Assembly (NCBI RefSeq): GCF_001194135.2
Contig: NC_068989.1
Coordinates: 4,556,470 to 4,598,797, forward strand
Direction: 5' to 3'
DNA: 42,328 nucleotides
Source of the DNA: Octopus bimaculoides
Taxonomy: Eukaryota
Position numbers and translations under genes: made by a program. Below the pieces are notes generated by a model. It saw only the letters and a list, made by a program, of their open reading frames with translations, searched no databases and was not told the origin of the DNA. Below are positions 2,590 to 38,898 of this stretch, one piece after another. Numbering within the stretch: position 1 is the first letter of the stretch; each line of letters starts with the position of its first letter.

Positions 2590-2942
2590 TTGTGTGTGTG
2601 TGCGTGTGTCTGGGGTATGTTCAAGCTATGAACCGTGTAGAATGGTTATAAGCTCGTTTTCGGCCGATTTCCAGACTACATATACATTTCATTCCTATTT
2701 ATACTTGTATCTGCGACATTCTAAACAGTAAATCTGAATATAGATAAGCCGGGTGTAATTCACTTGCATTTTACATAGAGGACGTCTTCAGAGATGTACT
2801 AACGATTCAGTAGGGTAAGAGAGATTGGTTACACTTTGATATATCATCTATCTGATTTTTAATATTGGCAGTCATTGACTCAAGTACTTACATACATGAT
2901 TGTCATTCAGGATTTAGCAAAACTAGAAAAACGAGAACCAAC

Positions 2943-3702
2943 CTTTGGCATATTCAAACATTTGCAACCATACAATTGGGCGATTCTTCTCGCCGACAGG
3001 ATGTGTCCGGCCACAAGCACCACCGACTCGGAGATCACCATTACAAGTGTCCAATAAATCAAGCACAGCGTTATCATCGAACTTCATGTCAGCATCTGTT
3101 GCAAGAATATAGGTCCGGCTGTCGAATTCTTCAGGGCTCGGAAGGAACGGTGACTTGATGTTCACTTTGGTATCTTTAATTAAATTTCCACTGACGGTGT
3201 TAATAGATTTCTTTTCTATTTTCGGATTAATGTGAATACTGATGTCATTGCAAACCATCTCAGTTATTGTACTCGGGGCCCATGGAGTACCAGAATCTTC
3301 AAGCCCATACACGTATGCAGGGTTCACCACTGAATGTTTGCTGGCCGATAATTTACCGTTCATCTTGGAGTCGTCCATGCCATTTGAATAGAGATATACG
3401 CTAGAGATTGAATATAGGTTTTTAACCAGTTCTGAATCATCCGACCAGTATGGCTTCACATCTCCCTTGGTATATGCAGCAGAATCGCTATATTGATTCA
3501 GCATCGAATTTTCGTAGTCATATCTTATTGTAGGACTTTTCGTTTGGTTGTCCAATGAATCTACACCGTAGAATTTCTTTTCATCGACACAATACCGGGC
3601 GTTGAATGGCTTCGATTCCATTTCGCAACGTTTCAGTCTTTTTTCAATCCAATTGTAAGCTTTTCTCACCCGGAAACTCATTATGTAGTTCATATATAAT
3701 AC
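2943..3702 (-). CDS. CHS: Chitin synthase exon (VLYMNYIM ... long insert ... TYILATDADMKF ... GGACGRTHP ... QMFEYAK)
   Basis: Lies within ORF 2923-3723. Acceptor ctttaaag|GTA, donor AAAG|gttggt. Length is 760 nt, phase 0 to phase 1, consistent with both neighbouring exons. Contains the DxD-type motif and the Q-x-FEY motif. Confidence 0.93.
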
Positions 3703-3837
3703 CTTTAAAGATCGAGAAGACATTATACATTATATACATTATACATTATATATACATATACACACACACACACATACACATACACACACATACACACACA
3801 CATACACACACATGCACGCACGCACACACACGCGCAT

Positions 3838-3870
<33 letters not shown>

Positions 3871-4161
3871 NNNNNNNNNNNNNNNNNNNNNNNNNNNNNN
3901 NNNNNNNNNNNNNNNNNNNNNNNNNNNNNNNNNNNNNNNNNNNNNNNNNNNNNNNNNNNNNNNNNNNNNNNNNNNNNNNNNNNNNNNNNNNNNNNNNNNN
4001 NNNNNNNNNNNNNNNNNNNNNNNNNNNNATATATACACGAACACACATATTCACACACATACAAACACATATGTCTATGCATGTGTGTCCGTATGTGACA
4101 GTGTATGTGCGTGTGTGCGTGTGTGTGTGTGTGTGTATGTGTGTGTGTGCGTGTGTGTATA

Positions 4162-4822: not shown

Positions 4823-5319
4823 CTGGAATTCACAGAAGAGATTTAATGAAATCAAAAGATGCAACTGACAATCTATATACTTATAATTTCTGTTTTAGTT
4901 TTTATCCAAGCTGCCGACAATTACAAATTTGATTATTCCGATTTTCTGTTATGAATAGCTGAGTCTTTTTGCATTAAACAAATTGTATAGCAGCATGAAT
5001 AATAAAAACTATACTCCATTTTAACATCTAATCTCCTCCATTACATACATATACTTAACTACTTAACGTATGTGCTTCGTGTATTTGGTGATCGGCTGCT
5101 ACTGACCCGGTGGAGAAGAAAATATCTCAAAGCGCCGGTCATTAAAACACCTAAGAGACATATATGCACATATACGTGTGTGTGTGTGTGTGCGTGTGTG
5201 TGNNNNNNNNNNNNNNNNNNNNNNNNNNNNNNNNNNNNNNNNNNNNNNNNNNNNNNNNNNNNNNNNNNNNNNNNNNNNNNNNNNNNNNNNNNNNNNNNNN
5301 NNNNNNNNNNNNNNNNNNN

Positions 5320-6214
5320 GCTCCACTTCGAATTCTGATTCTCTATACATGGTTGTACATATGAAAACTTTGCTCACTTTGGGTACCCCGGTCAACATTT
5401 CACTCGTCTTATCATGTCTGGTATGAATTCCTTCCGGTTTGTAATTCAAATGCAAATGATGTTCGAAGAAGATATTGTTGTAAGTAAAACTTAAGAAGTT
5501 CGATTCCGAAGATTTCAGTATGGAATTTGGTACAGGTGTATGGTTCATGCCCAGCATTAGAAATGGTAACAACCAAAGTAAAACTGCAATTCCTAAACAA
5601 AACCACGAAGCGAGAGTTAATCCTGACAGGGCAGACAACTTTACGACATGAAAAAAACCATAGAAATTGTCGAAAATTATGATCAAGATTGTGATCGGAG
5701 TGACGAATATTGTTGGTAGGTAAATACCACTACGTGTAAGGCATATTCGTGTTGATAAGTAAGTGAACGCATGCGATAATAAACCCGCAAAGAGGTGAAT
5801 CAAGAGTCCATTGCTGATGGTTTTTGTTGAATTTATATTAAGGAAACCTTGCAATAAGCTGTAAAATGATTCTTCGAAGCTGCCTTGCCGATTTAAGCGA
5901 GTTACAACAATGGCTAAGTCAAAAAGTACTACCAATTTCAAAATTGTATAAATTATACTGGCATTTTTACGACCATCAATGAGGTCAGATCGAGATCGTA
6001 ATGTAAATGTTGCTATTCCAGGGCACCACGTGAAAGATAAAGCCAATAAGGATGCGGACAAAATTAGAGATTCTGAAATAGTCAAGATTTGACTAAAACC
6101 AGTCACAAATGACGTGGCCACAACTAATATTACAGAAATTAGTCCGAACGCAACACAGAGCAGATTGTTCAGAGTTTTAGTGCTTGAATCGATGTTATCA
6201 TGGCCCAATATGCG
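5320..6214 (-). CDS. CHS: Chitin synthase exon (multi-TM N-terminal domain into CTTMYRE motif); its 3' end lies in the assembly gap 5203-5319
   Basis: Hydrophobic TM-like segments are followed by KVFICTTMYRESEFEVE, a variant of the CATMWHE motif. Acceptor tttttttccag|CGC at 6214, phase 0. Confidence 0.9.
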
Positions 6215-8641: not shown

Positions 8642-9305
8642 CTGTAAAGAAAAAAAGGAAAATTGTTAAAAACCTTCCATCAAGGCAACGTTTTTTCTTT
8701 TTTTTTTTTAAGATAAGAGAAATACGATCGTGATTCCACGATATTGATTATTCTAATACTGTTTTCAGATAAATTCGTTCNNNNNNNNNNNNNNNNNNNN
8801 NNNNNNNNNNNNNNNNNNNNNNNNNNNNNNNNNNNNNNNNNNNNNNNNNNNNNNNNNNNNNNNNNNNNNNNNNNNNNNNNNNNNNNNNNNNNNNNNNNNN
8901 NNNNNNNNNNNNNNNNNNNNNNNNNNNNNNNNNNNNNNNNNNNNNNNNNNNNNNNNNNNNNNNNNNNNNNNNNNNNNNNNNNNNNNNNNNNNNNNNNNNN
9001 NNNNNNNNNNNNNNNNNNNNNNNNNNNNNNNNNNNNNNNNNNNNNNNNNNNNNNNNNNNNNNNNNNNNNNNNNNNNNNNNNNNNNNNNNNNNNNNNNNNN
9101 NNNNNNNNNNNNNNNNNNNNNNNNNNNNNNNNNNNNNNNNNNNNNNNNNNNNNNNNNNNNNNNNNNNNNNNNNNNNNNNNNNNNNNNNNNNNNNNNNNNN
9201 NNNNNNNNNNNNNNNNNNNNNNNNNNNNNNNNNNNNNNNNNNNNNNNNNNNNNNNNNNNNNNNNNNNNNNNNNNNNNNNNNNNNNNNNNNNNNNNNNNNN
9301 NNNNN

Positions 9306-10920: not shown

Positions 10921-12483
10921 GGTCGAATTAGATTCGTCCTTTAATTTGGAAGTTTCCAAAACAGATTTCTAATATTGATTCTTCATATTTTGCTGGGAGT
11001 TTCCAGGAGTAAATTTGTGAATATGAAAATAATACTTGTATGATGCGTTGTGAATTTATGGAAAGAAATCCCATAAAACTCTACAATTTTGTTTAAAATG
11101 GAGAAGGGAAGATGCTAAAATATATAAGAGAATTTTAATTCGTGCAAACGATCGTTTCGTACAGAGATATAAATATCATGCAAATTCATGGTTGAATTAA
11201 ATTATCACTGTACTCTTCAGTGCAAGAAGTACAAATAGTTAGGGATTACCCCCAAAACTATTACCAGTTTGCTCTCAGTTATGTATTCAAAATAGGTTAT
11301 TCAGCATTTAATATATAAATCCAATAACGTTATTATAAAATAAGAATTTAGAGATACGTTCCGTTGGATAATTCTGAATATATTTCCTCAACCATGTAGC
11401 TTTCTTGGAGTATAGAATAACAATAATATTAATAATAAGGATTATTACGAAGTTGCATAACATTATTATTAATTCTTTTAATATATGAACAGCTTTACAT
11501 AGATTAGTAACCGTTGAAATTGCAACCCTCCTATAATACTGGTGCAGTTTCTTCGGGGTCTTTACTTAATATCCTTCGATTTAACTGTGTAGAGTTTTTC
11601 GTTTACATACTCTGCGTTGTATGATGTAGGGTTGTCCGTTAAGTTAGACGCGAACAATCTCCATTGCGAGTTTTGAGTGGATCATCACTTATAGTCCATT
11701 ATTTCAAACCATTAAATGTACGTATGCATGTGTGTATTTGTGCGTGCGTGTGTGTGTGTGCGTGTGTGTGTGTGTGTGTGTGTGNNNNNNNNNNNNNNNN
11801 NNNNNNNNNNNNNNNNNNNNNNNNNNNNNNNNNNNNNNNNNNNNNNNNNNNNNNNNNNNNNNNNNNNNNNNNNNNNNNNNNNNNNNNNNNNNNNNNNNNN
11901 NNNNNNNNNNNNNNNNNNNNNNNNNNNNNNNNNNNNNNNNNNNNNNNNNNNNNNNNNNNNNNNNNNNNNNNNNNNNNNNNNNNNNNNNNNNNNNNNNNNN
12001 NNNNNNNNNNNNNNNNNNNNNNNNNNNNNNNNNNNNNNNNNNNNNNNNNNNNNNTGAACAGGATCTAGAAAAAATAAATAAAAATAATAATAATATTTTA
12101 TTATTGGCACAGGACCTGGAATTTGGCAGGAGGGGACTAGTCGGTTACATCGACCCCATTGCTCAACTGGTACTTATTTTATCGACCCTAAAAGGATGGA
12201 AGGCAAAGTCGACCTGGGCGGCATTTGAACTCTGCGCGAGGCCCACTGGTAAGAGTATAGCACTCTTGATCATAAGATTCTGGTTTCGATTCCCGGACTG
12301 GACAGCGTCATGTGTTCTTGAACAAAATGCTTCATTCCACGTTGTTCCAGTCGTTGAGTAACCCTGTAAGGGACTGGCTTCCTTTCTATGGGTTTACGTT
12401 ATGATCTCAGTCACTTGTACGCCATGGAAATTGGGCAAACGTTCCTATGAATCCCAGGACCCGAGACAGCAATGTGTACGGGT

Positions 12484-13790: not shown

Positions 13791-15680
13791 AAAACAAATA
13801 AAACTTCGTTATTGAAATATCGTATCTAACTCTCTTTCAAAAGATGCTCATGATTTAACTACATTATTTTTCACTTCATGATTCACGTTCAAAAGAACTA
13901 CTAATTTTACTGACTTTATAACAATTTTACTGTTTATTAACCTTTTCTCTCTCAGACCACGAGTTCAACTCATTTACAAGAGTCGGGGATCCTACAAAAT
14001 AACGTATCATTGACACTATCTCAATTTACACGTTCTTTCTGAAAACCAGATGAGTTTTTTTTTTTTCATCGTTCGACCCGGGCGACATACAGCTTCCACT
14101 CCAACGCCCGCACACACACACACACAGGCCTCCGCAACAAGTTCCAAATAAGCTTAACTCGAGAAATTTACACGCTTTCTTACTTTTCATTTTACTTAAA
14201 GTTCATTCTCTCGTATTTGGACTGTCGAAAACGCATGACGTTCTCTCCACTACGGAAGGACGCAGGTGGTTGCTCGAAAAGTGATATCCTTAACTTGCCC
14301 TGGATGTTAGCGTTTCATACATAGGCAAAATTTAACTCAGCCCTATAAACCGACGAAATGCTCATCTATTTAATATTGCTGCCGCTATTTAAATCGGTGA
14401 AATTGTGCATCCTTCTGTACGTAGGGAGACTTGGCTGTTAAAAGTTAGGGACCTAAATAATGAAGAAAGTTTTCTGGTAAGATTACAAACAAACAGCCCC
14501 TTGGTAAATAATCGATTCATTCAGAGAGTTTTTTTCTTTATTATAAGCGTATGATCTTTATGCTGTTTATTTTTTCCAGCTGTCGATCAACTTCAGTTAG
14601 CTGTTGAGACCAACTAAGGTAGTTGACCACTGGAAATTTAAAATGGCAGAATAAAATTAAACGTTGCATACCTCAAAATTCATCTTAGTTCTTACGTTTC
14701 GATTTCAGAACCTTCAAAGAAAATCAAATAAAACTGTTGCAATGTGTGAACTTAGAATAAGCAGAAAGAATAATGCGATAACACAAACATCATAGCACTT
14801 CTGATATCGGCACTAGGAAACATTTAAGNNNNNNNNNNNNNNNNNNNNNNNNNNNNNNNNNNNNNNNNNNNNNNNNNNNNNNNNNNNNNNNNNNNNNNNN
14901 NNNNNNNNNNNNNNNNNNNNNNNNNNNNNNNNNNNNNNNNNNNNNNNNNNNNNNNNNNNNNNNNNNNNNNNNNNNNNNNNNNNNNNNNNNNNNNNNNNNN
15001 NNNNNNNNNNNNNNNNNNNNNNNNNNNNNNNNNNNNNNNNNNNNNNNNNNNNNNNNNNNNNNNNNNNNNNNNNNNNNNNNNNNNNNNNNNNNNNNNNNNN
15101 NNNNNNNNNNNNNNNNNNNNNNNNNNNNNNNNNNNNNNNNNNNNNNNNNNNNNNNNNNNNNNNNNNNNNNNNNNNNNNNNNNNNNNNNNNNNNNNNNNNN
15201 NNNNNNNNNNNNNNNNNNNNNNNNNNNNNNNNNNNNNNNNNNNNNNNNNNNNNNNNNNNNNNNNNNNNNNNNNNNNNNNNNNNNNNNNNNNNNNNNNNNN
15301 NNNNNNNNNNNNNNNNNNNNNNNNNNNNNNNNNNNNNNNNNNNNNNNNNNNNNNNNNNNNNNNNNNNNNNNNNNNNNNNNNNNNNNNNNNNNNNNNNNNN
15401 NNNNNNNNNNNNNNNNNNNNNNNNNNNNNNNNNNNNNNNNNNNNNNNNNNNNNNNNNNNNNNNNNNNNNNNNNNNNNNNNNNNNNNNNNNNNNNNNNNNN
15501 NNNNNNNNNNNNNNNNNNNNNNNNNNNNNNNNNNNNNNNNNNNNNNNNNNNNNNNNNNNNNNNNNNNNNNNNNNNNNNNNNNNNNNNNNNNNNNNNNNNN
15601 NNNNNNNNNNNNNNNNNNNNNNNNNNNNNNNNNNNNNNNNNNNNNNNNNNNNNNNNNNNNNNNNNNNNNNNNNNNNNNNN

Positions 15681-17787: not shown

Positions 17788-20389
17788 CCGTTGATCGGAT
17801 CAACTGGAACCCTCGTCGTCGTAACCGACGGAGCGCTACCAATGTGTGGGTGCGTGCGTGTGCACACGTTTGTCTATAAATACACGCTTCCATGTTTTTA
17901 TTATTTCTTTCAGTCTTTATAAACTCTGATTCGACTGAGACATCATGAGACATCAATTTCCCACCTGTAACTTATCACACCCAACCACCCTATTCATTTC
18001 ACGTTGATATAGAACTTCCATCGTTTATATTCTCACGTTGTAACCTTGGGCTCATTCATCCCAACTCATTTGCTACTTTCGTTTGAAAAACTCACATAAA
18101 GCAGAACACACAACAAAGGTACGAAACAGTTCAAGTTGAACCGTAATACATTATAATACAAACGTAATGCATTATAATACACACATAGCAGTTATACTTG
18201 TTCGGCGAGTAACATGTCTGAAATGATGCAACATTGATTTCGTTTATCTTTATTACTTATAATCACACTAATCTCACCCCCACGATACTAGCAATATATA
18301 TGTATGTTATGTATATGTATATATATATATATATATNNNNNNNNNNNNNNNNNNNNNNNNNNNNNNNNNNNNNNNNNNNNNNNNNNNNNNNNNNNNNNNN
18401 NNNNNNNNNNNNNNNNNNNNNNNNNNNNNNNNNNNNNNNNNNNNNNNNNNNNNNNNNNNNNNNNNNNNNNNNNNNNNNNNNNNNNNNNNNNNNNNNNNNN
18501 NNNNNNNNNNNNNNNNNNNNNNNNNNNNNNNNNNNNNNNNNNNNNNNNNNNNNNNNNNNNNNNNNNNNNNNNNNNNNNNNNNNNNNNNNNNNNNNNNNNN
18601 NNNNNNNNNNNNNNNNNNNNNNNNNNNNNNNNNNNNNNNNNNNNNNNNNNNNNNNNNNNNNNNNNNNNNNNNNNNNNNNNNNNNNNNNNNNNNNNNNNNN
18701 NNNNNNNNNNNNNNNNNNNNNNNNNNNNNNNNNNNNNNNNNNNNNNNNNNNNNNNNNNNNNNNNNNNNNNNNNNNNNNNNNNNNNNNNNNNNNNNNNNNN
18801 NNNNNNNNNNNNNNNNNNNNNNNNNNNNNNNNNNNNNNNNNNNNNNNNNNNNNNNNNNNNNNNNNNNNNNNNNNNNNNNNNNNNNNNNNNNNNNNNNNNN
18901 NNNNNNNNNNNNNNNNNNNNNNNNNNNNNNNNNNNNNNNNNNNNNNNNNNNNNNNNNNNNNNNNNNNNNNNNNNNNNNNNNNNNNNNNNNNNNNNNNNNN
19001 NNNNNNNNNNNNNNNNNNNNNNNNNNNNNNNNNNNNNNNNNNNNNNNNNNNNNNNNNNNNNNNNNNNNNNNNNNNNNNNNNNNNNNNNNNNNNNNNNNNN
19101 NNNNNNNNNNNNNNNNNNNNNNNNNNNNNNNNNNNNNNNNNNNNNNNNNNNNNNNNNNNNNNNNNNNNNNNNNNNNNNNNNNNNNNNNNNNNNNNNNNNN
19201 NNNNNNNNNNNNNNNNNNNNNNNNNNNNNNNNNNNNNNNNNNNNNNNNNNNNNNNNNNNNNNNNNNNNNNNNNNNNNNNNNNNNNNNNNNNNNNNNNNNN
19301 NNNNNNNNNNNNNNNNNNNNNNNNNNNNGAAATTCTTGCCCAAATCATAATGTCCGTATTTTTCCGCATATTTAGAAAAAAAAATTCTGAAAAAAGTTTA
19401 AAAAATGAAGGAAATGGGGGTGGGAGTGGTAATATAGAAATATCGATTTTTGCCGTTTTTTTTTTGTTTTGTTTTTTGCAGATTCGTATTCCCCGTAGCC
19501 GAAAAGGTAGAGTCTGTTCTATAACACAAAATAGATAAGTATACGAAGTTTGAAAGTCTTTCCGTACCAAAAACACTACGTAAAACATTAATGAAAAATG
19601 TGGCCCCCGTTTTAAAAAAGATCCCAATAATTGAAGCCATTTTCAGACTAACACAAATTTTATGGAGACATACGCAGAAATGTAGTTGTGGGGATGGCGA
19701 ACTAACTGTAGTAGCTGCTAGGATAATCTAAACAAACTTACTGGGTGACAACAGGAGAGAAAGAAGTGAGAAGCAGTCAGACGGAGAAATATAGTGTGGA
19801 ACATGCCGAATCGCTTATGTTACGTGATAGCCTATTGCTCAGTACGGTGGGGAGGAAGGTCTTCTTGTTTATTGTTTTAACTTTTCCGTGTTCAGACTTA
19901 AATAGAACAAGTTAACATTGCCACCGCCATTTTACAACGGATGTTTTCGTTCTGAAGAATCAATTCACAAAATGTTACAGAAAGAATAAGAACTACCAGT
20001 CATAAATCGAAAAACCCAGTCATTTTCCCAGGTAAAAATATTTTAAGAAAATTGTACAATAAATTAATATAATATAATTGAATGTATAATATACTTAAAT
20101 GTAATATAAATATGTAATTTTTTTAAATACATAAATTTGAAATAATAATGAGTAAAAATGAATAAAAGTTTAACCTTGGCAAAATTCAAAGTCGAAGGCC
20201 TTCTTAAAAGTCGAATGTAAAATATGAAGGCAAAATACATATTTAAACTTTAAATTACAGTGTCAATTTTATATATTTTTTAATTTATACATTTATATTA
20301 CTTTTAATTATATTACATTAATTTATTATATAATTTTCAGCGTTACTATGTGTTTTTTTATACTGAACATCTCTAGTTCTCATCGTTTG

Positions 20390-21901: not shown

Positions 21902-22471
21902 TTAGGTTGTCCGGAAAGTTCTGAGCGTGTTTTTTTTTGTTTTGTTTTTGCTTTTTTTTTTAAATATGCAAAAAGCGATATACTTCATGAACCGTACTTT
22001 TAGAGACTTCCAATTCTTCTGCAAGTTCCCTAGTCTTGATATTTGAGTTTTCTTGGATTTTTGCCTTCAAAATATCTTCATCCAATTTTGAAGGTCTTCC
22101 ACTGCGATTGTCATCTTCCAAGCTAAACTCTCCAGCTTTGAATTTTGCAAACCACCTTCGAACACTTGATTCATCTCCAGCATCATCGCCATAAACTTCA
22201 CAAATGGTTTCGCAAGTCTTTGCAGCATTTCCTCCTTTTTTAAAAAAGAAAAGCATTACAACGCGAATATGAAATTTTTGGTTATCCATTTCAAATGTCA
22301 ATAAAAGGTAAGCGGAATGAAAGATAAATCTATTTTTCGTCTGGAACAAAGAAGAGATGCAATTCCACTTCAATCAACGCCAAAGTTTTAACTGTGTTAT
22401 GTTTCAGGTGTGTTCAATGCGGTATTACAAGATTTAGCTTTAAAATGCTCAGAACTTTCCGGACAACCTAA
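21902..22471 (-). mobile_element. Internally deleted mariner with perfect 25-bp TIRs, encoding only the DNA-binding domain
   Basis: TIR ttaggttgtccggaaagttctgagc (21902-21926) has an exact reverse complement at 22447-22471, flanked by CA and TA. ORF 22289->21960: MDNQKFHIRVVMLFFFKKGGNAAKTCETICEVYGDDA...VRRWFAKFKAGEFSLEDDNRSGRPSKLDEDILKAKIQENSNIKTRELAEELEVSKSTV (HTH1-RSGRP-HTH2). No DD34D domain. Confidence 0.93.
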
Positions 22472-22912: not shown

Positions 22913-23775
22913 CACTGATCGGCTGAAAAGTTCATTGGCTGACTAGCATACCTTCATGGAATTTGACCAAATAAGCATAATAACTCTTGCAGTCCACTCA
23001 CTTTTTCTATCGGGGTTGCGCCAATGGATCACATTGGTGAAGAAACTTTCATCCTATTGGTCAAAAAAGTCATCAACAGCAGCCGTGACAACATCATCAC
23101 TGCGACGCTAGTTATCAGCCAAGTGTTTTTTACATATTGGCGAACAGATGATAGTCAGATGAGGCTAAATCAGGAGAACAAGAGCAGTGATCAGACAGCT
23201 CAAAGCCACAGTCAAGCATAGCAGCTATTGAAAGCAAGGACTTCTGTGCTGGAGCATTACCTGATGAAACAAGACCCCTTTCGTCAGTTTTCCTGGGCAT
23301 TTGGTCTTGATAACCTTTCGTAATTGTCTCAGCAAGTTGGTATGGGGCTCTTCATTAATACTGTAGCCATTTTGAATATAGTCAATAAACACAATGTCAT
23401 TTGCATCCCCTAAAATTGAGGCTATCACTTTGCTTGCAGATAAAACGACTTTGACCTTCTTTGGAGCAGGTTTCCATTGCGTGGAAAGTCTCTTTGTCTC
23501 TCGCTCAAAGTGATGAACCCGACACTCATCCTGGGTTAGGAAACGTTCAAGGGAACACGCTGGGGCTACCTCAAACAATGTCAGATTTTCCGTGGTGTGA
23601 TCAGCCTGGTGTACTTTTGATCAGGCGTCAGAAGACGCAGCGACTAACGAGCAGAAACCTCCGTCATGTCATGCCAAGTTCTTTGTACAGAATATCCTCA
23701 ACTCTCTCATGGGATATACTAACAGCATTGATTATTTGATCTATGGTCAATCGCCTGTCATCCATCGCCGTGTGG
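22913..23775 (-). mobile_element. Degenerate, 5'-truncated mariner transposon (DD34D catalytic region)
   Basis: Translates DDRRLTIDQIINAVSISHERVEDILYKELGM ... ERFLTQDECRVHHFERETKR ... KVIASILGDANDIVFIDY ... PGKLTKGVLFHQ ... SPDLASSDYHLF, with stops and frameshifts. TIR remnant ggctgaaaagttcattggctgac at 22921-22943. Confidence 0.9.
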
Positions 23776-26717: not shown

Positions 26718-29700
26718 ATGCCAAAGTCTAAAGGAAAAAGCAAAATATTGGCGACCAAATTGACCGAAGGTCTTGGAGAAACGTGTAAGAAAATTAAAGC
26801 AAAAAAGCAAGTGGCTAGAAAACAGACTATTTCCATCAAAGACATATATTATCCAAGGATAAAAGAATATAAGGACAATATTGAGATGATGATAAACAAT
26901 ATAGATAGAAAATGTATTTACTTGGAAAGTATCGGATTAGATAAATATCGTTTTCTACGAGATGTCAAAAATAGATTAGATATTCTGGAGGGGGATATTA
27001 ACAATCATGAATTTATTGTTTTCCCAAAACTGAATTGGTTTCTCGAACGGCTTTTTGAAATCTATGTAAGCAACAATCATTCTACGTACAAGAACATAGC
27101 AATGCCAACGCCATGCAGTAAATTTCGTCATCTCTCTTCAGTTGTCTCAACAACACCAGTGTTTCATGCTTCTGGTGAAGATTCCCAGAACTTAATTACA
27201 AATATTGTCGCAATCTACAATGGAATAGTAACCTATTCACCGCATTTAATGACATTACGCTGTACTACAGCGGATCATGACGACCACGTGCTTCACTGTC
27301 CTTCCCAAGTCACTGATATTGTTAAAATTTGTAGAAACACAGTTATGGTGACAATTCCGTTTCGGAAAAAAATTCTATTCTTCAGTCCTTCTTCTTGCAC
27401 AATGAAAACTTTTCAATACGGTTTTAAGAAGATTTCCTATGTAAAAGATAATGAATTTGTGGGTGTGAAACTCTTTAGCAAAATAATATATCTCGTAGAC
27501 TGGTATAATGATACAATTGAAAGCAAATTTAGCCTAAAAGATGAACCTACAAGCATTGCAATAGCAGAATATCGCCTCTTAGTCACATTTACTAATTTCA
27601 ATCATATTTCTTGCTACAACCTCAATGGTCATCAATTATTTCAATTATACGGCCATTCTTTAGATTCTTCACCAGCCATCACCGTTTATCGTAACTATTT
27701 TTATGTCCTCCAAGGTAATATTATTCATAAAATTTCTCCTACTGGTGATGTATCACAAAGAGAAATTGGAATAAAAGCCCGACATCTTACTCTTGGTAAA
27801 AATATTATTATCTTGTCCGACTATTTAGGTTTTGTGCACATTGTTAGAACAAACAAAGACTTTTGGCCAAGGACAAGCTATTTGCAGAAGTTTCAAACTC
27901 CAGTTTTAAATAATCAAATTTATATAGACGATCCAGGCTATATTCAATGGATTTTGCCTATATCAAGAAACTCTACATTATTTATCTGTTCACGTCTAAA
28001 AGCTGTATTATTCACAGATAATGGAAAAGAAATCCTCGAAAAGACTTGTAATTTCCATTTCCAACCTGATGTCTTTTGTAGATTCAACTCGAACACTTTT
28101 CTTATTCTGTTTAGGGAACAGAAAAAGATTCAATTCATTTCGTACTCCGTTCACTACCCAATACTAAAAGAAGGTCACATCGTAGACGTCCACTTTGATT
28201 ACATTCGAATGTGTCATATGATATTAGATAAGGTTTTGGCTGTGACCACAAGTGAAACTAAAGAGTTACATATCATTTCCATTAAAAATGACAACGTTAT
28301 AATCGAAAACAAAATTTCATTGGAACATGTTGATGTCACCATTGCTGCGACTCCACTCAATTTCATAGTTGGAGATGTGAAGGAAAATAAGCTGCTTTTT
28401 TATTCAAGTTTTGGGGAGAGGCTCTTTGAAAAACAACTGGATTTCGACTTTCATCACATCTACTCCGATAATTTACACTTTTATATTGTGCACAGTAAAG
28501 GTTACTTTCTCAAGTGTTACAATATGTATGGGGAAGTCAAATGGCGATTACAATTTCCTTGCGCTGCTCACTCTCAAATCGGTGTTTTCCAAGGAACTTT
28601 TTCTGTGCTAGACGTTAAGCTCAATAGAGTTCTTTTTTACAAGTATAAAGAATGGTCCAGTTGTCATTCAGATTTAGTAGATCCTTACATTCAAAATATA
28701 GATTTACGAGATTCCTATGAGAATAAGAAAATTCTCATCGCAGATATATGTCTTCTACCAAATGGACAGCTGGTCGTATCAGACATGAACAAATCTTGCT
28801 TGTTATACATTTCCAATGATGGACGTGTTATGTCTACATTATTTCTGCCGTCCTTAGCTACAGATATATGCCGATGGGATAGTAGCCAAATAGGAGTAAC
28901 ATTACCATTGGAGAAAGAATTAAGGGTTATCGGAAATCTATCGAAACGAGTTCGAAGTATATCGTTAAGTAAACCTTATGTATGTGTGCGCAAATTCGGT
29001 AACGGTCGAATTCTTTGCTTTTGTGATAAGCCATGCAATTTAGATATTGTATCGATTCAAAAACACAACCAAGGGGAAATCATTTCTACAATTAGTGTCC
29101 CTTTCGTTATAAAGTCATTAGCCATAGATGACGAAGCATTTAATGTGCTGATTGTTACTAAGAAGAAAGTATTTGAGTGTAAAATCTCATCAAAAGCTGA
29201 CTCCACTCTTTTACCCACCAACTTCAAACCTCAGTGTCTTCTGCGTGGCGGATGCATTGATAAAACTTGTGTTTATCTGATAGACGAAAGTCGACTGTTT
29301 GCTTTAAGTAAGCATAATTTGGAGATGAAGGATCCTCTGACCAGGAATCAGCTTAACAAGTTCATTGATCACGTCGATGTACTTTCCAGAAACATTTGTG
29401 TAACTGAAATGCTGTCTTCGAAACTATATATGCAGGATCTGGCAGTTTCTGATCAATCCCGGGAATGCTTGGTCCCTCGGTGTTTAGGAGACGAAAAAAC
29501 AGTGAACATTCTTTGTTCAGTTATTACTGAAAACAACTTGATTGCAATATGCGATCAAAATAATATAAACGTAAAGGTATTAACTCTTGATGGGAAACTT
29601 CTTGACTCAATCAAACTGGACGTTTTACCCATTCGAATGTGTCGATGGATGCCAAACACATTGGCTATGACAACTACTGCAAATCAATTGTTGTCATTAA

Positions 29701-31760
29701 CAGTTGAATTTCCACTGTCCTTTACCACATACCAGGTGGAAAGAAAATATGGGTGTATCGCTTCTTTCTCAGACAATCAATTAGTTTGTAGTATTCGTCA
29801 AAATATGCAGACTAAGAAAGGTCCCGTAATAATAACAGTAGGAATGGGAACGAATTTTTGGGACGATAAAACAAAAGTGCCTGCCCTTCATATCGTTGAA
29901 CTACTTCCGACATTCCGTGTAATAAAAGAAATAGATTTAGAAGGGAACGAAGTGAATAATGGCTTATTTGATATCGCAGTTAATGTTGATGATGTCATTA
30001 TCGTCTACGCTGCAGGGTATCGTTTAATCAAGAAGTTTATCCTTTTTATGAACCGCAATGGCGAGCGTTTGCATAGTTTTTGTCCCTTGGTGTCTATGAG
30101 AAGTGCGTGTTTAACAATCAACGACGCTTATGTGTTCGCTGCTCTACAGAATTCAAACGATGAAAATATTCGCATTGTTTGTTTGACACACACTGGCAAA
30201 TACAAGAAAATATTTTTAAATTCAGAACATTGTACGCGTCCATTTAATTTCACCAGTATTAGCTGCAAAGGTCCAAAGTTTGTTGGATTTGACAAAGACT
30301 ATTTATATACTGAAGGTATGCTTAAATTAAATCGGGAAAGTTTCCACGTTTGTCAGCTAGTGACTGACCTATGTTCTGTTCAAATAAAAGATATCGATAT
30401 TTCTATGGATGGAAAGACAGTTGTGATTGAAAAGGGCAATACTGGAAATGTTAAACTGTATCAGAGAAATGGGAAGCTGCTATATCACACAGATCTTGAA
30501 ACTTTAGTTGGTGGTGTGTGCTTTTCAGACGAAAACTACATAATAGTCACAGTTCCTGATAGACAAGAAATATTTCAACTGAGCCAAGAAGATTTGGGAA
30601 GGTGTAAGGTCTGGCAAACTTCAGTATCTTATGGATTAATACGGAAAAAAATAAGAAATACTTACTATTGTGTACTTACTAATTTGGCTGAATATCATAC
30701 CATACAGATTGATGACGACCAATTGAAAGTTCTGAAATGTACGTCAATAAAGCTTGGTTCTGTCCTTCATTTCTCTTCCAGTTCGGATACTATAACTCAG
30801 ATAACTAATAAGAAAGTGACAGTTGATCAATTGAGAAGTAGATCAAGGGAAATTGTTGAAAGAGGCCTAAAAGTAAGACGTGGTAATTACATAGCAAGTT
30901 GTACATTGAAGAACGATCAAATAACAATTAGGAGGTTACCTCATAGAACCAAGATGTTTCCAATTTCAACTACAGTTTTTGGTGATCCAAATAGTGGCAG
31001 CGACTTCGGAATCTACAAAAACATACATCTAATTAAGTTACAAGAGGATATAGTTGTACTGCTATACCAGTTTACTCTTATTGTGGCCACAGTAGAAGGT
31101 GACATACTTCAGCAGAGAAAATTTGAAAGAATGCCACTTGACATATGCTACTGGTCGGAAAAGTGTTTCGTTGCCGTCTTCTGTGACGTTAAAGAGCTGA
31201 TGTTCTTCAAAAGTGATCTGACACTTTTAAAAACCATCAACACGGAAAAAATATACAGCATGATTCATAAAAAAAATACTGGTCGATTGGTCTGTGCATA
31301 TGAAGGTGATCCAAATCGGAAACAGCGTCCACATCTGCCATCCTCGTATGTAGATGTACTTCACATTGACGGTGCAACGTATGAATACAGTTGTGAAATG
31401 GATTTTGGAATGGATACAGTCACAGCAATTGGTGTCACATCGAGCGAAGACATCGTTATTCTAAAGCAAAGTGAATCAAGTGAAAGTCTTTGTTGGTATA
31501 GAGATGGATTGGTTAGGCTTCTCGACATACCGTTAAAGAGGTTTCCCAGACGAATAGCAATACACGGTGAAAAAGTGTACATAACGGAAAGAGAGAGTGA
31601 TATTTTACAAGTAACATTGGATACTCCACTGGAAACTTACGTCAGTCTTGCTGATATTGAAGTCTACCTTATATACGATATACATGTTACAGAGGGTTCT
31701 TTGATTCTTCTAGGAGGTTTAGACAACTATTCTTGTGCAGTATTTTGTTACGAAACATGA
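26718..31760 (+). CDS. Single-exon 1680-aa protein: basic N-terminus, short coiled-coil-like segment, six tandem NHL/TolB-like beta-propeller units (TRIM-NHL-like C-terminal type, uncharacterised)
   Basis: Stop-free for 5,043 bp in AT-rich DNA. ATG in aaaATG context with an in-frame TAA 21 nt upstream (26697). Recurrent blade motifs include IADICLLPNGQLVVSD...GRVMSTLFLPSLATDIC..D..QIGVTLP and IKDIDISMDGKTVVIE...GKLLYHTDL...GGVCFSDENYIIVTVP. The coding call is firm; the fold call comes from pattern recognition only. Confidence 0.88.
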   Translation: MPKSKGKSKILATKLTEGLGETCKKIKAKKQVARKQTISIKDIYYPRIKEYKDNIEMMINNIDRKCIYLESIGLDKYRFLRDVKNRLDILEGDINNHEFIVFPKLNWFLERLFEIYVSNNHSTYKNIAMPTPCSKFRHLSSVVSTTPVFHASGEDSQNLITNIVAIYNGIVTYSPHLMTLRCTTADHDDHVLHCPSQVTDIVKICRNTVMVTIPFRKKILFFSPSSCTMKTFQYGFKKISYVKDNEFVGVKLFSKIIYLVDWYNDTIESKFSLKDEPTSIAIAEYRLLVTFTNFNHISCYNLNGHQLFQLYGHSLDSSPAITVYRNYFYVLQGNIIHKISPTGDVSQREIGIKARHLTLGKNIIILSDYLGFVHIVRTNKDFWPRTSYLQKFQTPVLNNQIYIDDPGYIQWILPISRNSTLFICSRLKAVLFTDNGKEILEKTCNFHFQPDVFCRFNSNTFLILFREQKKIQFISYSVHYPILKEGHIVDVHFDYIRMCHMILDKVLAVTTSETKELHIISIKNDNVIIENKISLEHVDVTIAATPLNFIVGDVKENKLLFYSSFGERLFEKQLDFDFHHIYSDNLHFYIVHSKGYFLKCYNMYGEVKWRLQFPCAAHSQIGVFQGTFSVLDVKLNRVLFYKYKEWSSCHSDLVDPYIQNIDLRDSYENKKILIADICLLPNGQLVVSDMNKSCLLYISNDGRVMSTLFLPSLATDICRWDSSQIGVTLPLEKELRVIGNLSKRVRSISLSKPYVCVRKFGNGRILCFCDKPCNLDIVSIQKHNQGEIISTISVPFVIKSLAIDDEAFNVLIVTKKKVFECKISSKADSTLLPTNFKPQCLLRGGCIDKTCVYLIDESRLFALSKHNLEMKDPLTRNQLNKFIDHVDVLSRNICVTEMLSSKLYMQDLAVSDQSRECLVPRCLGDEKTVNILCSVITENNLIAICDQNNINVKVLTLDGKLLDSIKLDVLPIRMCRWMPNTLAMTTTANQLLSLTVEFPLSFTTYQVERKYGCIASFSDNQLVCSIRQNMQTKKGPVIITVGMGTNFWDDKTKVPALHIVELLPTFRVIKEIDLEGNEVNNGLFDIAVNVDDVIIVYAAGYRLIKKFILFMNRNGERLHSFCPLVSMRSACLTINDAYVFAALQNSNDENIRIVCLTHTGKYKKIFLNSEHCTRPFNFTSISCKGPKFVGFDKDYLYTEGMLKLNRESFHVCQLVTDLCSVQIKDIDISMDGKTVVIEKGNTGNVKLYQRNGKLLYHTDLETLVGGVCFSDENYIIVTVPDRQEIFQLSQEDLGRCKVWQTSVSYGLIRKKIRNTYYCVLTNLAEYHTIQIDDDQLKVLKCTSIKLGSVLHFSSSSDTITQITNKKVTVDQLRSRSREIVERGLKVRRGNYIASCTLKNDQITIRRLPHRTKMFPISTTVFGDPNSGSDFGIYKNIHLIKLQEDIVVLLYQFTLIVATVEGDILQQRKFERMPLDICYWSEKCFVAVFCDVKELMFFKSDLTLLKTINTEKIYSMIHKKNTGRLVCAYEGDPNRKQRPHLPSSYVDVLHIDGATYEYSCEMDFGMDTVTAIGVTSSEDIVILKQSESSESLCWYRDGLVRLLDIPLKRFPRRIAIHGEKVYITERESDILQVTLDTPLETYVSLADIEVYLIYDIHVTEGSLILLGGLDNYSCAVFCYET

Positions 31761-32006: not shown

Positions 32007-32037
32007 TACAGACAGAGAGAGAGAAACGAGTAAAATT

Positions 32038-32755
32038 AAAGTAACTCTCCTATATATAATTGTCTCAAGTTCCGGGTCTCCTGGAGCCGGTTACTCGGTT
32101 TCCGTGGAGGATGAGTAACCGAGATCACAACATTCACACTGAATGGGACACCAGTACATCGCAAAGTTACTCATTCTGAAGCTGAATGAACTGGGGTAAC
32201 ATAAGATGAAGTGTTTTGCTCTCGAGAACACAGCGTACCACCCTGACCCGGGACTTGAAACAATAACCTTGAAATTGTGAGTGTAACATTTTAACCACTA
32301 GTCTGCAGTCTTTCAAATGAAGTGAACGATTGGATATGACCTGGTTTTTGAGCATTAAGCTAAGTTGATGCAGTTTATTTTGCGTTTTCATCGGCCGAAA
32401 CTTATCTAAGTAATCTAAGAACAATTGTGGAAAAAATAACCGTACCCAAGATTCGAATCATATTTAATTAATAGTGCCATATTCTCTCCATTTGTGTTAT
32501 AAACCCAAAAGGATTCTAGAGTTAACAAATGTGTAAGGTAAAAATACATATTCTTCTGTAGTATTAATTCATATTAGCTGGACCCGTGAATGTTTCACGT
32601 AGAAGGTTGCCTCGACAAAATTCTTGTATATATCAAAGATAGTGTCGCATTCAGTGTGAATGTTGTGATCTCGGTTACTCATCCTTCACGGTAACTGAAT
32701 AATCGGTTCTAGGAGTCCTGGGATTTGAAACAATTATATTTAAGGGAGTTACTTT
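32038..32755. repeat. Inverted pair of related SINE segments (32038-32151 / 32642-32755)
   Basis: The left arm aaagtaactctcc...ggatgagtaaccgagatcacaacattcacactgaatgggacac matches the reverse complement of the right arm, including an exact 36-nt core. Confidence 0.85.
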
Positions 32756-33625
32756 ACTTTTAGTCATTATTTTAATGCAGCGCAACGCGGGAAATGCAAA
32801 AATACTTTCTGGTGTGGACATAAGAGTACGATAAACTCATCGTTTTTTTTTTTGTTATTTTTTGTGAAATTTCATTTTGACTTGATCAATTCCTCTTCAA
32901 AGAACATATTTGTCATTAACGGCTGTTTATGATTGGAGTGGATCAAATGAAAGGCAACAATTGAGGTGATTTGATATGAATGCAATAATTTGATATTAAT
33001 ATATGTATATGATTTTCTTATATAAACAAATATATACATTCTCTGAAAGACGGTACTTATATATAATTTTTTCTTCTCAAAAGCTGTTCACGCTACGGCT
33101 TGTTCCAATAGTGTACCATTCGTATGTATTCTCCTAGCACGCGTGTGTAGTATGTACATAGATTGTTGATGTAATTTCATCTCGTTATGCGATTTTAGTC
33201 TTCTTCAGAAAAACTATTCGTTATTCAATTTATTCACTTAAGAACTATTTGTATATGGGTACCCATTACACATTACTCATTGGGCAGAGTATGCTTTGCT
33301 GTAAAAAATTATTACACCGTAACATTTTTATTGCTTTCACTAATTGACTTTGAAGATCATTTTCTGTATTATGTATTTTATCCAACAATTTCTGTCAACT
33401 GATCTTATTGTAGTTATCCCCCTTGCTAAGAGATTTAAGCACTCCTAGACGTAGTTTTGTCTACCAATTATTTGGACATGCTCAATTCATCAAAGTTTTA
33501 TTTTTTTCTTTGTTCATTTCTCCTTATTTCATGAGTAAGTTATAACTAAAACGTAATATATGTTAGTAAACTATTGAAATGTTCAATAATTATGCTGTTG
33601 GAATTGGTACAAATAATTACTTCTA

Positions 33626-38082: not shown

Positions 38083-38898
38083 NNNNNNNNNNNNNNNNNN
38101 NNNNNNNNNNNNNNNNNNNNNNNNNNNNNNNNNNNNNNNNNNNNNNNNNNNNNNNNNNNNNNNNNNNNNNNNNNNNNNNNNNNNNNNNNNNNNNNNNNNN
38201 NNNNNNNNNNNNNNNNNNNNNNNNNNNNNNNNNNNNNNNNNNNNNNNNNNNNNNNNNNNNNNNNNNNNNNNNNNNNNNNNNNNNNNNNNNNNNNNNNNNN
38301 NNNNNNNNNNNNNNNNNNNNNNNNNNNNNNNNNNNNNNNNNNNNNNNNNNNNNNNNNNNNNNNNNNNNNNNNNNNNNNNNNNNNNNNNNNNNNNNNNNNN
38401 NNNNNNNNNNNNNNNNNNNNNNNNNNNNNNNNNNNNNNNNNNNNNNNNNNNNNNNNNNNNNNNNNNNNNNNNNNNNNNNNNNNNNNNNNNNNNNNNNNNN
38501 NNNNNNNNNNNNNNNNNNNNNNNNNNNNNNNNNNNNNNNNNNNNNNNNNNNNNNNNNNNNNNNNNNNNNNNNNNNNNNNNNNNNNNNNNNNNNNNNNNNN
38601 NNNNNNNNNNNNNNNNNNNNNNNNNNNNNNNNNNNNNNNNNNNNNNNNNNNNNNNNNNNNNNNNNNNNNNNNNNNNNNNNNNNNNNNNNNNNNNNNNNNN
38701 NNNNNNNNNNNNNNNNNNNNNNNNNNNNNNNNNNNNNNNNNNNNNNNNNNNNNNNNNNNNNNNNNNNNNNNNNNNNNNNNNNNNNNNNNNNNNNNNNNNN
38801 NNNNNNNNNNNNNNNNNNNNNNNNNNNNNNNNNNNNNNNNNNNNNNNNNNNNNNNNNNNNNNNNNNNNNNNNNNNNNNNNNNNNNNNNNNNNNNNNNN

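What the first reader, a model, noticed from the sequence alone, without database searches (positions are those of the whole stretch)
27195..31760. Six tandem ~250-aa NHL/TolB-like beta-propeller units in one polypeptide
Seen: a unit-start pattern (hydrophobic-x-[DN]-hydrophobic ... G/N-x-hydrophobic-V-x-x-D ... G[KR]-hydrophobic ... P/A-x-D-I-C ... V-T-[LIV]-P ... I) recurs at about aa 160 (27195), 408 (27939), 674 (28737), 931 (29508), 1223 (30384) and 1432 (31011). Spacings are 248, 266, 257, 292 and 209 aa, and the last unit is about 248 aa. Known: one ~250-280-aa six-bladed NHL propeller is the usual C-terminal module of TRIM-NHL proteins (Brat, LIN-41/TRIM71, TRIM2/3), where it binds RNA or partner proteins, and molluscs carry expanded TRIM/NHL-like families. 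Inference: this is a multivalent six-propeller array built by old internal duplication, since the units are highly diverged. I do not recognise this architecture from characterised proteins. It is a candidate cephalopod-specific RNA-binding or immune scaffold.
Basis: partly seen in the sequence, partly recalled or inferred. Interest (0 to 1): 0.78.

Follow-up and report, generated by a model that had tools for sequence, protein, structure and literature searches.

The report
Octopus protein with six NHL propellers
This intron-less Octopus bimaculoides gene encodes a 1680-residue protein made of six diverged tandem copies of the NHL-type beta-propeller domain that normally sits once at the end of TRIM ubiquitin ligases; the layout is found only in octopods, has never been studied, and its function is unknown.

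Summary

- **Repeat:** BLAST sees no internal repeat. Profiles built from 11 family members align the units to each other in register (up to 96.7% probability, E 4e-10).
- **Domain identity:** Each unit aligns from its first residue to the complete ~250-aa C-terminal domain of mollusc RING/B-box/NHL (TRIM-like) proteins (98.1-99.6%, E 1e-13 to 1e-24). That domain matches solved six-bladed NHL propellers (TRIM2/3, Thin, Brat, TRIM71, PknD, Pizza6) at E 1e-30 to 1e-49.
- **What is missing:** There is no RING, B-box, signal peptide or membrane segment. The ~160-aa N-terminus is specific to this family.
- **Weak points:** Unit 5 is recognisable only over its first ~120 residues. The AlphaFold models are low-confidence, all-beta, and resemble multi-propeller proteins.
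- **Is it a real gene:** Yes. The O. vulgaris orthologue is intact, with dN/dS 0.39.
- **Distribution:** Several collinear, intron-less paralogues exist in Octopus species and in Argonauta. All are annotated "uncharacterized".

My reading is that it is a cytosolic multivalent binding scaffold derived from a TRIM-NHL domain. This is a new architectural variant of a known domain. The ligand (RNA or protein), and whether the array arose by internal duplication or by fusion, are unresolved.

The parts
26718..27194 (+). N-terminal region (aa 1-159). It has a variable basic stretch followed by a conserved, probably helical segment. It is specific to this family and contains no RING or B-box.
   Evidence: Pfam finds nothing. 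The region's HMM hits only six-unit family members. hhalign against full-length TRIM-like proteins is not significant (0.8%). pI is 9.5 and there is no hydrophobic leader. dN/dS is about 1.1.
27195..27938 (+). Unit 1 (aa 160-407), NHL-type propeller domain
   Evidence: hhalign against the TRIM-like C-terminal domain profile gives 98.7%, E 3.8e-16, columns 1-209 against 1-238. The AlphaFold model has 22 strands. dN/dS is 0.42.
27939..28736 (+). Unit 2 (aa 408-673), NHL-type propeller domain
   Evidence: hhalign gives 98.7%, E 1.5e-16. This is the best-modelled unit, with pLDDT about 70-84 and 23-24 strands. Unit 2 against unit 4 gives 94%.
28737..29507 (+). Unit 3 (aa 674-930), NHL-type propeller domain and the most conserved unit among paralogues
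   Evidence: hhalign gives 99.4%, E 4.6e-22, columns 1-235 against 1-239. The only Pfam NHL trace in the protein lies at aa 675-694 (E 0.3). Identity to paralogues is 35-63%.
29508..30383 (+). Unit 4 (aa 931-1222), NHL-type propeller domain with insertions
   Evidence: hhalign gives 99.6%, E 1.1e-24. The unit HMM scores the cuttlefish TRIM-like domain at 73 bits. Only the first ~96 residues are modelled with moderate confidence.
30384..31010 (+). Unit 5 (aa 1223-1431), a short or degenerate unit. The first ~120 aa are NHL-type. The C-terminal ~85 aa consist of a Ser/Arg-rich linker and a conserved 'VRRGNYIA...RRLPHRTKMFP' motif with no detectable match.
   Evidence: hhalign gives 98.1%, E 1.2e-13, but only for columns 2-124. 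The C-terminal piece has no hit. The model has pLDDT below 50.
31011..31757 (+). Unit 6 (aa 1432-1680), an acidic NHL-type propeller domain (pI 5.0) that runs to the C-terminus
   Evidence: hhalign gives 99.2%, E 1.7e-19. Unit 4 against unit 6 gives 96.7% and unit 3 against unit 6 gives 96.5%. The model has pLDDT 60-88 and 22 strands.
31758..31760 (+). Stop codon

Best explanation
The ORF is a functional, single-coding-exon gene of Octopus bimaculoides.

**Shown**
- Its ~190-kDa product has a family-specific basic/helical N-terminus of ~160 aa.
- This is followed by six tandem, strongly diverged copies (15-19% identity to each other) of the ~250-aa six-bladed NHL-type beta-propeller domain. 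That domain forms the C-terminus of mollusc TRIM-like (RING-B-box-coiled-coil-NHL) proteins. Unit 5 is partly degenerate.
- The protein has no RING or B-box, so it lacks the ligase parts of its TRIM-like relatives. It also has no signal peptide or membrane segment, so it is probably a soluble intracellular protein.

**Inferred mechanism**
- It acts as a multivalent binding platform. Each propeller presents its own ligand-binding face.
- Each unit is kept between orthologues and paralogues but differs from its neighbours. The six faces therefore probably bind different partners or different sites, and hold several RNAs or proteins together.
- Whether the ligand is RNA (as for the Brat, LIN-41 and Mei-P26 NHL domains) or protein (as reported for other TRIM-NHL proteins) is not known.
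For: - **Intact ORF and gene call:**. The window is O. bimaculoides CM046609.1, and a gene with exactly this product is called there.
- **Selection:** the O. vulgaris orthologue is 91% identical and intact over 1674 aa. dN/dS is 0.39 overall and 0.27-0.48 in the units.
- **Conserved architecture:** collinear full-length paralogues at 30-51% identity exist in Octopus, and Argonauta hians has a member at 35%.
- **Repeat:** in-register unit-unit hhalign reaches 96.7%.
- **Domain identity by exhaustive search:** an HMM search of 1.84 billion proteins with the unit profile gives 218 hits at E<=1e-3. Apart from family members they are ~550-660-aa proteins matched once, with the match starting 230-320 aa from their C-terminus. 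These proteins carry RING, B-box and NHL.
- **Domain identity by profile comparison:** each unit against that domain profile gives 98.1-99.6%. A2 against A6 gives 99.5%. A6 against PDB hits Pizza6, Thin, TRIM3, TRIM2, PknD, Brat, TRIM71 and Mei-P26 NHL propellers at E 1e-20 to 1e-49. The unit profile itself hits TRIM3/TRIM2 NHL at 6e-4 to 1.6e-3.
- **Structure:** the AlphaFold models are all-beta, with 22-24 strands in units 1, 2 and 6. Foldseek's best matches are multi-propeller proteins.
- **Localisation and TE check:** no hydrophobic leader or membrane segment. No transposon domain and no flanking long repeats.
Against: - Pfam's NHL model does not reach threshold on the protein itself (E 0.3, 11.6 bits against a cutoff of 20). 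The NHL assignment therefore rests on profile-profile and transitive evidence.
- The AlphaFold models are low-confidence (mean pLDDT 54 and 47). Ring closure and blade number could not be inspected. Units 3 (C-terminal half), 4 (most of it) and 5 are essentially unmodelled.
- Unit 5 lacks a recognisable C-terminal half.
- Foldseek cannot tell NHL from WD40 propellers.
- There are no expression, localisation or binding data, so the scaffold function is inference only.
- dN/dS of 0.39, and about 1.1 in the N-terminus, shows fairly relaxed constraint.
Confidence: 0.6

Rival explanations
1. The units are generic WD40-type (or other non-NHL) propellers, as in DDB1, UTP21 or the IFT-A subunits, and the resemblance to NHL is only a shared blade motif.
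For: The Foldseek top hits are WD40 multi-propeller proteins. The unit profile also picks up highly repetitive cyanobacterial WD40 proteins through a ~30-aa blade motif. Unit 4 against a WD40 array reaches 85%.
Against: Matches to the TRIM-like NHL domain are 8-18 orders of magnitude stronger, cover the whole domain and are in register. Pfam WD40 is absent from the protein. The best single-stretch PDB hits of the unit profile are the TRIM3/TRIM2 NHL domains. The unit length of ~250 aa fits six blades rather than the seven usual for WD40.
Confidence: 0.05
2. The ORF is not a working cellular gene. It could be a decaying retrocopy, a transposon-borne ORF or an annotation artefact.
For: The CDS has no introns. 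Many truncated or chimeric family fragments exist in Octopus annotations (P0005, P0006, P0013, P0016-P0022). Mariner fragments lie 3-5 kb upstream. dN/dS is only moderately low.
Against: A 5-kb open frame in 35%-GC DNA is preserved in two species with dN/dS 0.39. The architecture is collinear across paralogues and in Argonauta. No transposase, RT or integrase domain is present in the protein. No terminal repeats bracket it.
Confidence: 0.05
3. The array is an innate-immune factor: a sensor, decoy or restriction factor derived from the expanded mollusc TRIM-like repertoire. Its propellers would recognise pathogen molecules rather than endogenous RNA or protein.
For: The family is lineage-restricted and multi-copy, evolves fairly fast (dN/dS 0.39), and has many fragments and unit-number variants. 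Its relatives are the large TRIM-like family. From general knowledge, vertebrate TRIM proteins are often antiviral.
Against: No test of positive selection at sites was done. No expression or induction data are available. No immune signalling domain (DEATH, TIR, CARD) is present.
Confidence: 0.2
4. On origin: the six units were assembled by successive fusion or insertion of separate TRIM-NHL-type domains, not by internal tandem duplication of one unit.
For: Each unit's HMM scores single-unit cuttlefish and other mollusc TRIM-like domains well above its sister units. For example, unit 4 scores 73 bits against at most 29 bits for sister units.
Against: The same pattern arises if an old internal duplication was followed by fast divergence of every unit, while single-unit genes stayed near the ancestral sequence. 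All units share the same register and orientation with no intervening RING or B-box remnants. At 15-19% identity a tree would be unreliable.
Confidence: 0.3

Closest known systems
Mollusc TRIM-like RING/B-box/NHL proteins (e.g. Acanthosepion pharaonis CAE1315789.1 = P0023; Mercenaria 'TRIM71-like' XP_045172484.2 = P0134)
   Same: Their complete C-terminal ~250-aa domain is homologous to every unit, in register from the first residue.
   Different: They have one propeller preceded by RING, B-box and a coiled coil. The octopus protein has six propellers, no RING or B-box, and an unrelated N-terminus.
Class VII TRIM-NHL proteins with solved NHL domains: TRIM2, TRIM3, TRIM71/LIN-41, Brat, Mei-P26, Thin
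   Same: The same six-bladed NHL propeller superfamily. This is shown transitively (A6 against PDB at E 1e-20 to 1e-36) and weakly by direct match (TRIM3 6e-4).
   Different: They have a single NHL domain and work as E3 ligases or translational repressors. Their RNA-binding residues could not be traced here. Sequence identity is very low.
LRP5/6, LRP4 and LRP2 (megalin): tandem arrays of six-bladed YWTD propellers
   Same: These are the closest precedent I found for several six-bladed propellers of the same broad superfamily in one chain. The A6 profile cross-hits them.
   Different: They are extracellular receptors with a signal peptide, EGF spacers between propellers and a membrane anchor. 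They carry the YWTD motif rather than NHL. None of these features is present here.
WD40 multi-propeller scaffolds (DDB1, UTP21, IFT-A subunits, EML)
   Same: They have the same overall shape class, with several beta-propellers in one soluble intracellular chain acting as an interaction platform. They are the top Foldseek matches.
   Different: They use a different repeat family, usually seven-bladed WD40. There is no sequence relationship beyond a generic blade motif.

Membership tests
NHL-repeat six-bladed beta-propeller domain (Pfam PF01436 repeats) | Pfam NHL repeat model reaches its gathering score on the protein | tested here: not met
   The only trace is at aa 675-694, E 0.3, 11.6 bits against a cutoff of 20.
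NHL-repeat six-bladed beta-propeller domain (Pfam PF01436 repeats) | Significant whole-domain homology to domains that do contain NHL repeats | tested here: met
   Each unit against a profile of 109 TRIM-like C-terminal domains gives 98.1-99.6%, E 1e-13 to 1e-24. 33 of 57 relatives have Pfam NHL. The domain profile hits solved NHL propellers at E down to 1e-49. A2 against A6 gives 99.5%.
NHL-repeat six-bladed beta-propeller domain (Pfam PF01436 repeats) | About 250-280 aa folding into six four-stranded blades closed into a ring | tested here: inconclusive
   Unit lengths are 248, 266, 257, 292, 209 and 249 aa. The AlphaFold models are all-beta with 22-24 strands in units 1, 2 and 6, but mean pLDDT is 54 and 47. 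Units 3-5 are poorly modelled, coordinates could not be inspected, and unit 5 is truncated.
TRIM / RBCC proteins (TRIM-NHL, class VII) | N-terminal RING finger | tested here: not met
   No RING family in the Pfam scan at E<=10. The N-terminus has only 3 Cys.
TRIM / RBCC proteins (TRIM-NHL, class VII) | B-box zinc finger(s) | tested here: not met
   No B-box hit.
TRIM / RBCC proteins (TRIM-NHL, class VII) | Coiled coil between the B-box and the C-terminal domain | tested here: inconclusive
   The N-terminal conserved segment aligns to the coiled-coil region of P0023 only at 0.8% probability (E 0.075; E 0.4-0.9). No coiled-coil predictor was available.
TRIM / RBCC proteins (TRIM-NHL, class VII) | A single C-terminal NHL domain | tested here: not met
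   Six tandem units.
Tandem YWTD-propeller receptors (LRP family) | Signal peptide, EGF modules between propellers, membrane anchor | tested here: not met
   No EGF or Ldl_recept_b hit in Pfam. The N-terminus is hydrophilic and the maximum 19-residue hydropathy is 1.7, in a beta-strand region.
WD40 multi-propeller proteins | WD40 repeats detectable by profile | tested here: not met
   No Pfam WD40 hit. The only weak hit is Beta-prop_WDR35_TULP_N, E 0.0066, 16 bits against a cutoff of 80. hhalign against a WD40 array gives at most 85%, against 98-99.6% for NHL.

The most novel reading that the evidence does not exclude
Octopods have evolved a new class of cytosolic scaffold: six differently specialised NHL propellers on one chain, freed from the TRIM ligase module. 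It would bind several RNA motifs or proteins at once to assemble RNP or protein complexes. Possible settings include neuronal mRNA localisation and control, or antiviral sensing. This would be the first multi-NHL array with a defined biology.
Probability: 0.15. Interest if true: 0.7.

Novelty: new variant of a known kind. Interest (0 to 1): 0.45.

Why it matters
NHL propellers are well studied as single RNA- or protein-binding modules at the end of TRIM ligases. A chain of six, without the ligase part, conserved across several paralogues and at least two octopod lineages, is an architecture with no characterised example. If each propeller has its own ligand, the protein would be a natural multivalent adaptor and a useful case of domain amplification in a lineage known for gene-family expansions. 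As it stands, this is a well-supported structural annotation of an 'uncharacterized' octopus family, not a functional discovery.

Tried and rejected
- **Self-BLASTP** at E<=10 gave no internal hits, so BLAST-level similarity is absent.
- **Pfam and PDB sequence searches** of the whole protein gave nothing significant.
- **hhalign of the whole alignment against itself** returned no rows. Unit-by-unit comparison was needed.
- **Word-indexed homologue search** with the unit profile found only Octopus proteins. The exhaustive HMM search was needed to reach TRIM-like relatives.
- **Two six-stretch hits outside octopods are spurious.** P0042 is a cyanobacterial NACHT/WD40-type protein and P0146 a bacterial Ig-like repeat protein.
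- **AlphaFold with 3-4-sequence alignments** gave low-confidence models. Foldseek returned only generic multi-propeller matches with low TM-scores.
- **Transposon or retro-element hypothesis:** no TE domains in the protein, no bracketing repeats, and no family fragments elsewhere in the window.
- **N-terminus as a vestigial TRIM coiled coil:** not significant.
- **Literature searches** for NHL with octopus or cephalopod, and for tandem NHL domains, found nothing relevant. PMC8382680 does not discuss TRIM.
- **Neighbouring minus-strand ORF as chitin synthase:** this was a recollection from memory and is not supported by Pfam or PDB searches.
Full report
**1. What is at the coordinates**

The window is eukaryotic. 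It is rich in microsatellites, at about 35% GC, and has N-run assembly gaps. An exact-product look-up places it in Octopus bimaculoides assembly GCA_001194135.2, chromosome record CM046609.1. A gene with exactly this 1680-aa product is called there.

The ORF 26718-31760 (+) starts with ATG and is by far the longest in the window.

**2. Is the ~250-aa periodicity real?**

At BLAST level it is not detectable. Self-BLASTP at E<=10 returns only the identity hit. Pfam and PDB sequence searches on the whole protein give nothing significant. The only NHL trace is E 0.3 at aa 675-694.

Profile methods show it clearly:
- With profiles from the five close homologues, unit-unit hhalign hits were weak but almost all in register.
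- After collecting eleven full-length family members (30-91% identity, collinear), the same comparison gave U4-U6 96.7% (E 4e-10), U3-U6 96.5% (1e-9), U2-U4 94.4% (9e-8), U2-U3 93.2% (3e-7), U1-U2 90.7% (1e-6) and U4-U5 80%. The aligned ranges begin at nearly the same offsets in both units.

**3. What are the units?**

An exhaustive HMM search of 1.84 billion representative proteins with the unit profile (A2) gave 218 hits at E<=1e-3. They fall into two groups.
- **Group (a): the family itself.** These are long proteins matched six times, plus fragments. All come from Octopus bimaculoides, O. vulgaris, O. sinensis and Argonauta hians, and all are named 'uncharacterized' or 'hypothetical'.
- **Group (b): single-unit relatives.** These are proteins of ~550-660 aa matched once.

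In 109 of the group (b) hits the match begins 230-320 residues from the C-terminus. One unit therefore equals their whole C-terminal domain.

Pfam shows the group (b) proteins are TRIM-like. Of 57 scanned, 35 have a B-box, 33 have NHL repeats and about 22 have a RING. Named examples are unnamed products of the cuttlefish Acanthosepion pharaonis, an Argonauta protein and a clam 'TRIM71-like' protein.

| Unit | Probability vs profile of the 109 C-terminal domains | E-value |
|---|---|---|
| U1 | 98.7% | 3.8e-16 |
| U2 | 98.7% | 1.5e-16 |
| U3 | 99.4% | 4.6e-22 |
| U4 | 99.6% | 1.1e-24 |
| U5 | 98.1% | 1.2e-13 |
| U6 | 99.2% | 1.7e-19 |

The alignments start at or near column 1 and cover ~210-220 of 260 columns. 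U5 is the exception and aligns over only ~120 columns.

Controls were clean. The reversed profile gives nothing, and a WD40 array gives at most 85%. The built-in hhalign of A2 against a 19-sequence domain alignment (A6) gives 99.5%, E 1.3e-22.

The link to solved structures is as follows:
- The A6 profile hits solved six-bladed NHL propellers: Pizza6 designs, Thin, TRIM3, TRIM2, PknD, Brat, TRIM71 and Mei-P26, at E from 1e-20 to 1e-49. It also hits the related YWTD propellers of LRP receptors.
- The best cuttlefish relative, P0023, hits the TRIM3/TRIM2 NHL domains at about 2e-11.
- The unit profile itself reaches TRIM3/TRIM2 NHL only at 6e-4 to 1.6e-3.

The NHL assignment is therefore strong but indirect. 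It rests on profile-profile comparison and one intermediate step.

**4. Structure prediction**

Two AlphaFold2 jobs (aa 125-930 and aa 931-1680, with only 4 and 3 sequences in the alignments) gave low-confidence models, with mean pLDDT 54 and 47.
- The models are essentially all-beta.
- Units 1, 2 and 6 are modelled throughout, with 22, 23-24 and 22 strands. That is what six four-stranded blades would give.
- Unit 2 (pLDDT ~70-84) and unit 6 (60-88) are the best. The C-terminal half of unit 3, most of unit 4 and all of unit 5 are not usefully modelled.

Foldseek against the PDB returns multi-propeller proteins (IFT-A subunits, UTP21, DDB1, axonemal WD proteins) at E 1e-13 to 1e-20, but with low TM-scores. 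This supports 'several beta-propellers in a row'. It cannot separate NHL from WD40, and I could not inspect coordinates to confirm ring closure.

Unit 5 is short (209 aa). Its last ~85 residues are a Ser/Arg-rich stretch plus a conserved VRRGNYIA...RRLPHRTKMFP motif, and they match nothing. It may be an incomplete propeller plus a linker.

**5. The rest of the protein**

- Residues 1-159 are basic (pI 9.5), with a variable start and a conserved segment that is probably helical.
- This region's HMM finds only family members.
- Comparison with full-length TRIM-like proteins is not significant.
- There is no RING, B-box, signal peptide or membrane segment.
- Units 1-5 are neutral to basic and unit 6 is acidic.

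**6. Is it a working gene?**

- The O. vulgaris orthologue (P0001, 91% identity) is intact over its whole length.
- Nei-Gojobori dN/dS is 0.39 overall, 0.27-0.48 within the units and about 1.1 in the N-terminal region.
- The six-unit order is kept in at least five Octopus paralogue groups and in Argonauta.
- The two O. bimaculoides paralogues examined are also single coding exons. Both lie on the small chromosome record CM046628.1, 2.8 Mb apart.
- Many O. vulgaris members and fragments share one 29.2-Mb record.
- The protein has no transposon domain, no long repeats bracket the ORF, and no other family fragment lies in the window.

**7. Origin**

I tested this, and each unit's HMM scores single-unit TRIM-like domains above its sister units. 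For example, U4 scores 73 bits against the cuttlefish domain and at most 29 bits against any other unit.

This is expected if every unit diverged fast from a conserved ancestral form. It is equally compatible with stepwise fusion of separate genes. At 15-19% identity I cannot decide, and the point is left open.

**8. How it probably works**

*Shown:* the domain composition and its conservation.

*Inferred:* with no RING or B-box it lacks the ligase parts of its relatives. With six propellers that are individually conserved yet mutually dissimilar, the most economical reading is a soluble multivalent adaptor whose propeller faces bind different partners.

From published work, the NHL domains of Brat and Mei-P26 bind single-stranded RNA motifs directly (PMC4015489 and PMC9070667, from the abstracts listed). 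From general knowledge, other TRIM-NHL domains bind proteins. Nothing here discriminates RNA from protein ligands. An immune role is possible but untested.

**9. Comparison and novelty**

The domain is known. The architecture is not described in any named homologue or in the literature searched.

The nearest precedents are the tandem YWTD propellers of LRP receptors, which are extracellular, EGF-spaced and carry a different motif, and the WD40 multi-propeller scaffolds, which belong to a different repeat family.

I rate this a new variant of a known kind. It is a solid structural annotation of an octopod-restricted, uncharacterised family. Interest is moderate because no function is yet attached.

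Noticed in passing
window 3871-4028, 5203-5319, 8781-9305, 11785-12054, 14829-15680, 18337-19328, 38083-38898 and smaller runs: Runs of N (assembly gaps, 3916 N in total) explain the 'ORFs' open in several frames and the apparent very low GC at about 8.7-9.4 kb, 14.8-15.8 kb, 18.2-19.6 kb and 37.9-39.4 kb. They are not genes.
   Followed up: yes
window 21960-22373 (-) and 23225-23578 (-): Two fragments of a mariner/Mos1-type transposase lie 3-5 kb upstream of the ORF: HTH_48 at E 8e-19 and Transposase_1 (partial DDE) at E 5e-11. They are out of order for a single intact element, so they are probably decayed copies.
   Followed up: partly
window 2923-3723 (-) and 5099-6208 (-): Two long minus-strand ORFs look like exons of a neighbouring gene. 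One is rich in hydrophobic, membrane-like segments. The other ends in a stretch that reminded me of a glycosyltransferase (chitin-synthase-like) catalytic region. Pfam and PDB searches gave no hit, so the identity is unverified.
   Followed up: partly
window 32025-32151 and 32642-32768: A 127-nt inverted repeat (85% complementary, 490 nt apart) lies about 270 nt downstream of the stop codon. It could be a MITE-like element or two inverted SINE copies.
   Followed up: no
window 20469-20535/25466-25532; 25694-25821/37469-37596/37601-37661: Dispersed short repeats sharing a core '...ATAAGTACCAG...', probably SINE-type elements, flank the gene region at a distance. They do not bracket the ORF as terminal repeats.
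   Followed up: no
paralogues: L003 and L004 (O. bimaculoides CM046628.1); O. vulgaris record of 29,193,250 bp: Family members cluster on one small chromosome-scale record in each species: P0002, P0007 and P0016 in O. bimaculoides, and P0006, P0010, P0015, P0020, P0021, P0209 and P0211 in O. vulgaris. The window copy lies on a different chromosome record.
   Followed up: partly
P0004 (O. sinensis, 1030 aa), P0003, P0005, P0006: Some annotated relatives have fewer units. P0004 appears to join unit 3 directly to the motif preceding unit 6. P0006 fuses C2H2 zinc fingers to a unit 2-3 fragment. These could be real unit-number variants, pseudogene fragments or gene-model artefacts.
   Followed up: no
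window 26718-27194 (aa 1-159): The N-terminal region has dN/dS about 1.1 between O. bimaculoides and O. vulgaris, against 0.27-0.48 in the propeller units. It is therefore either unconstrained or fast-evolving (only 155 codons, so the estimate is noisy).
   Followed up: no
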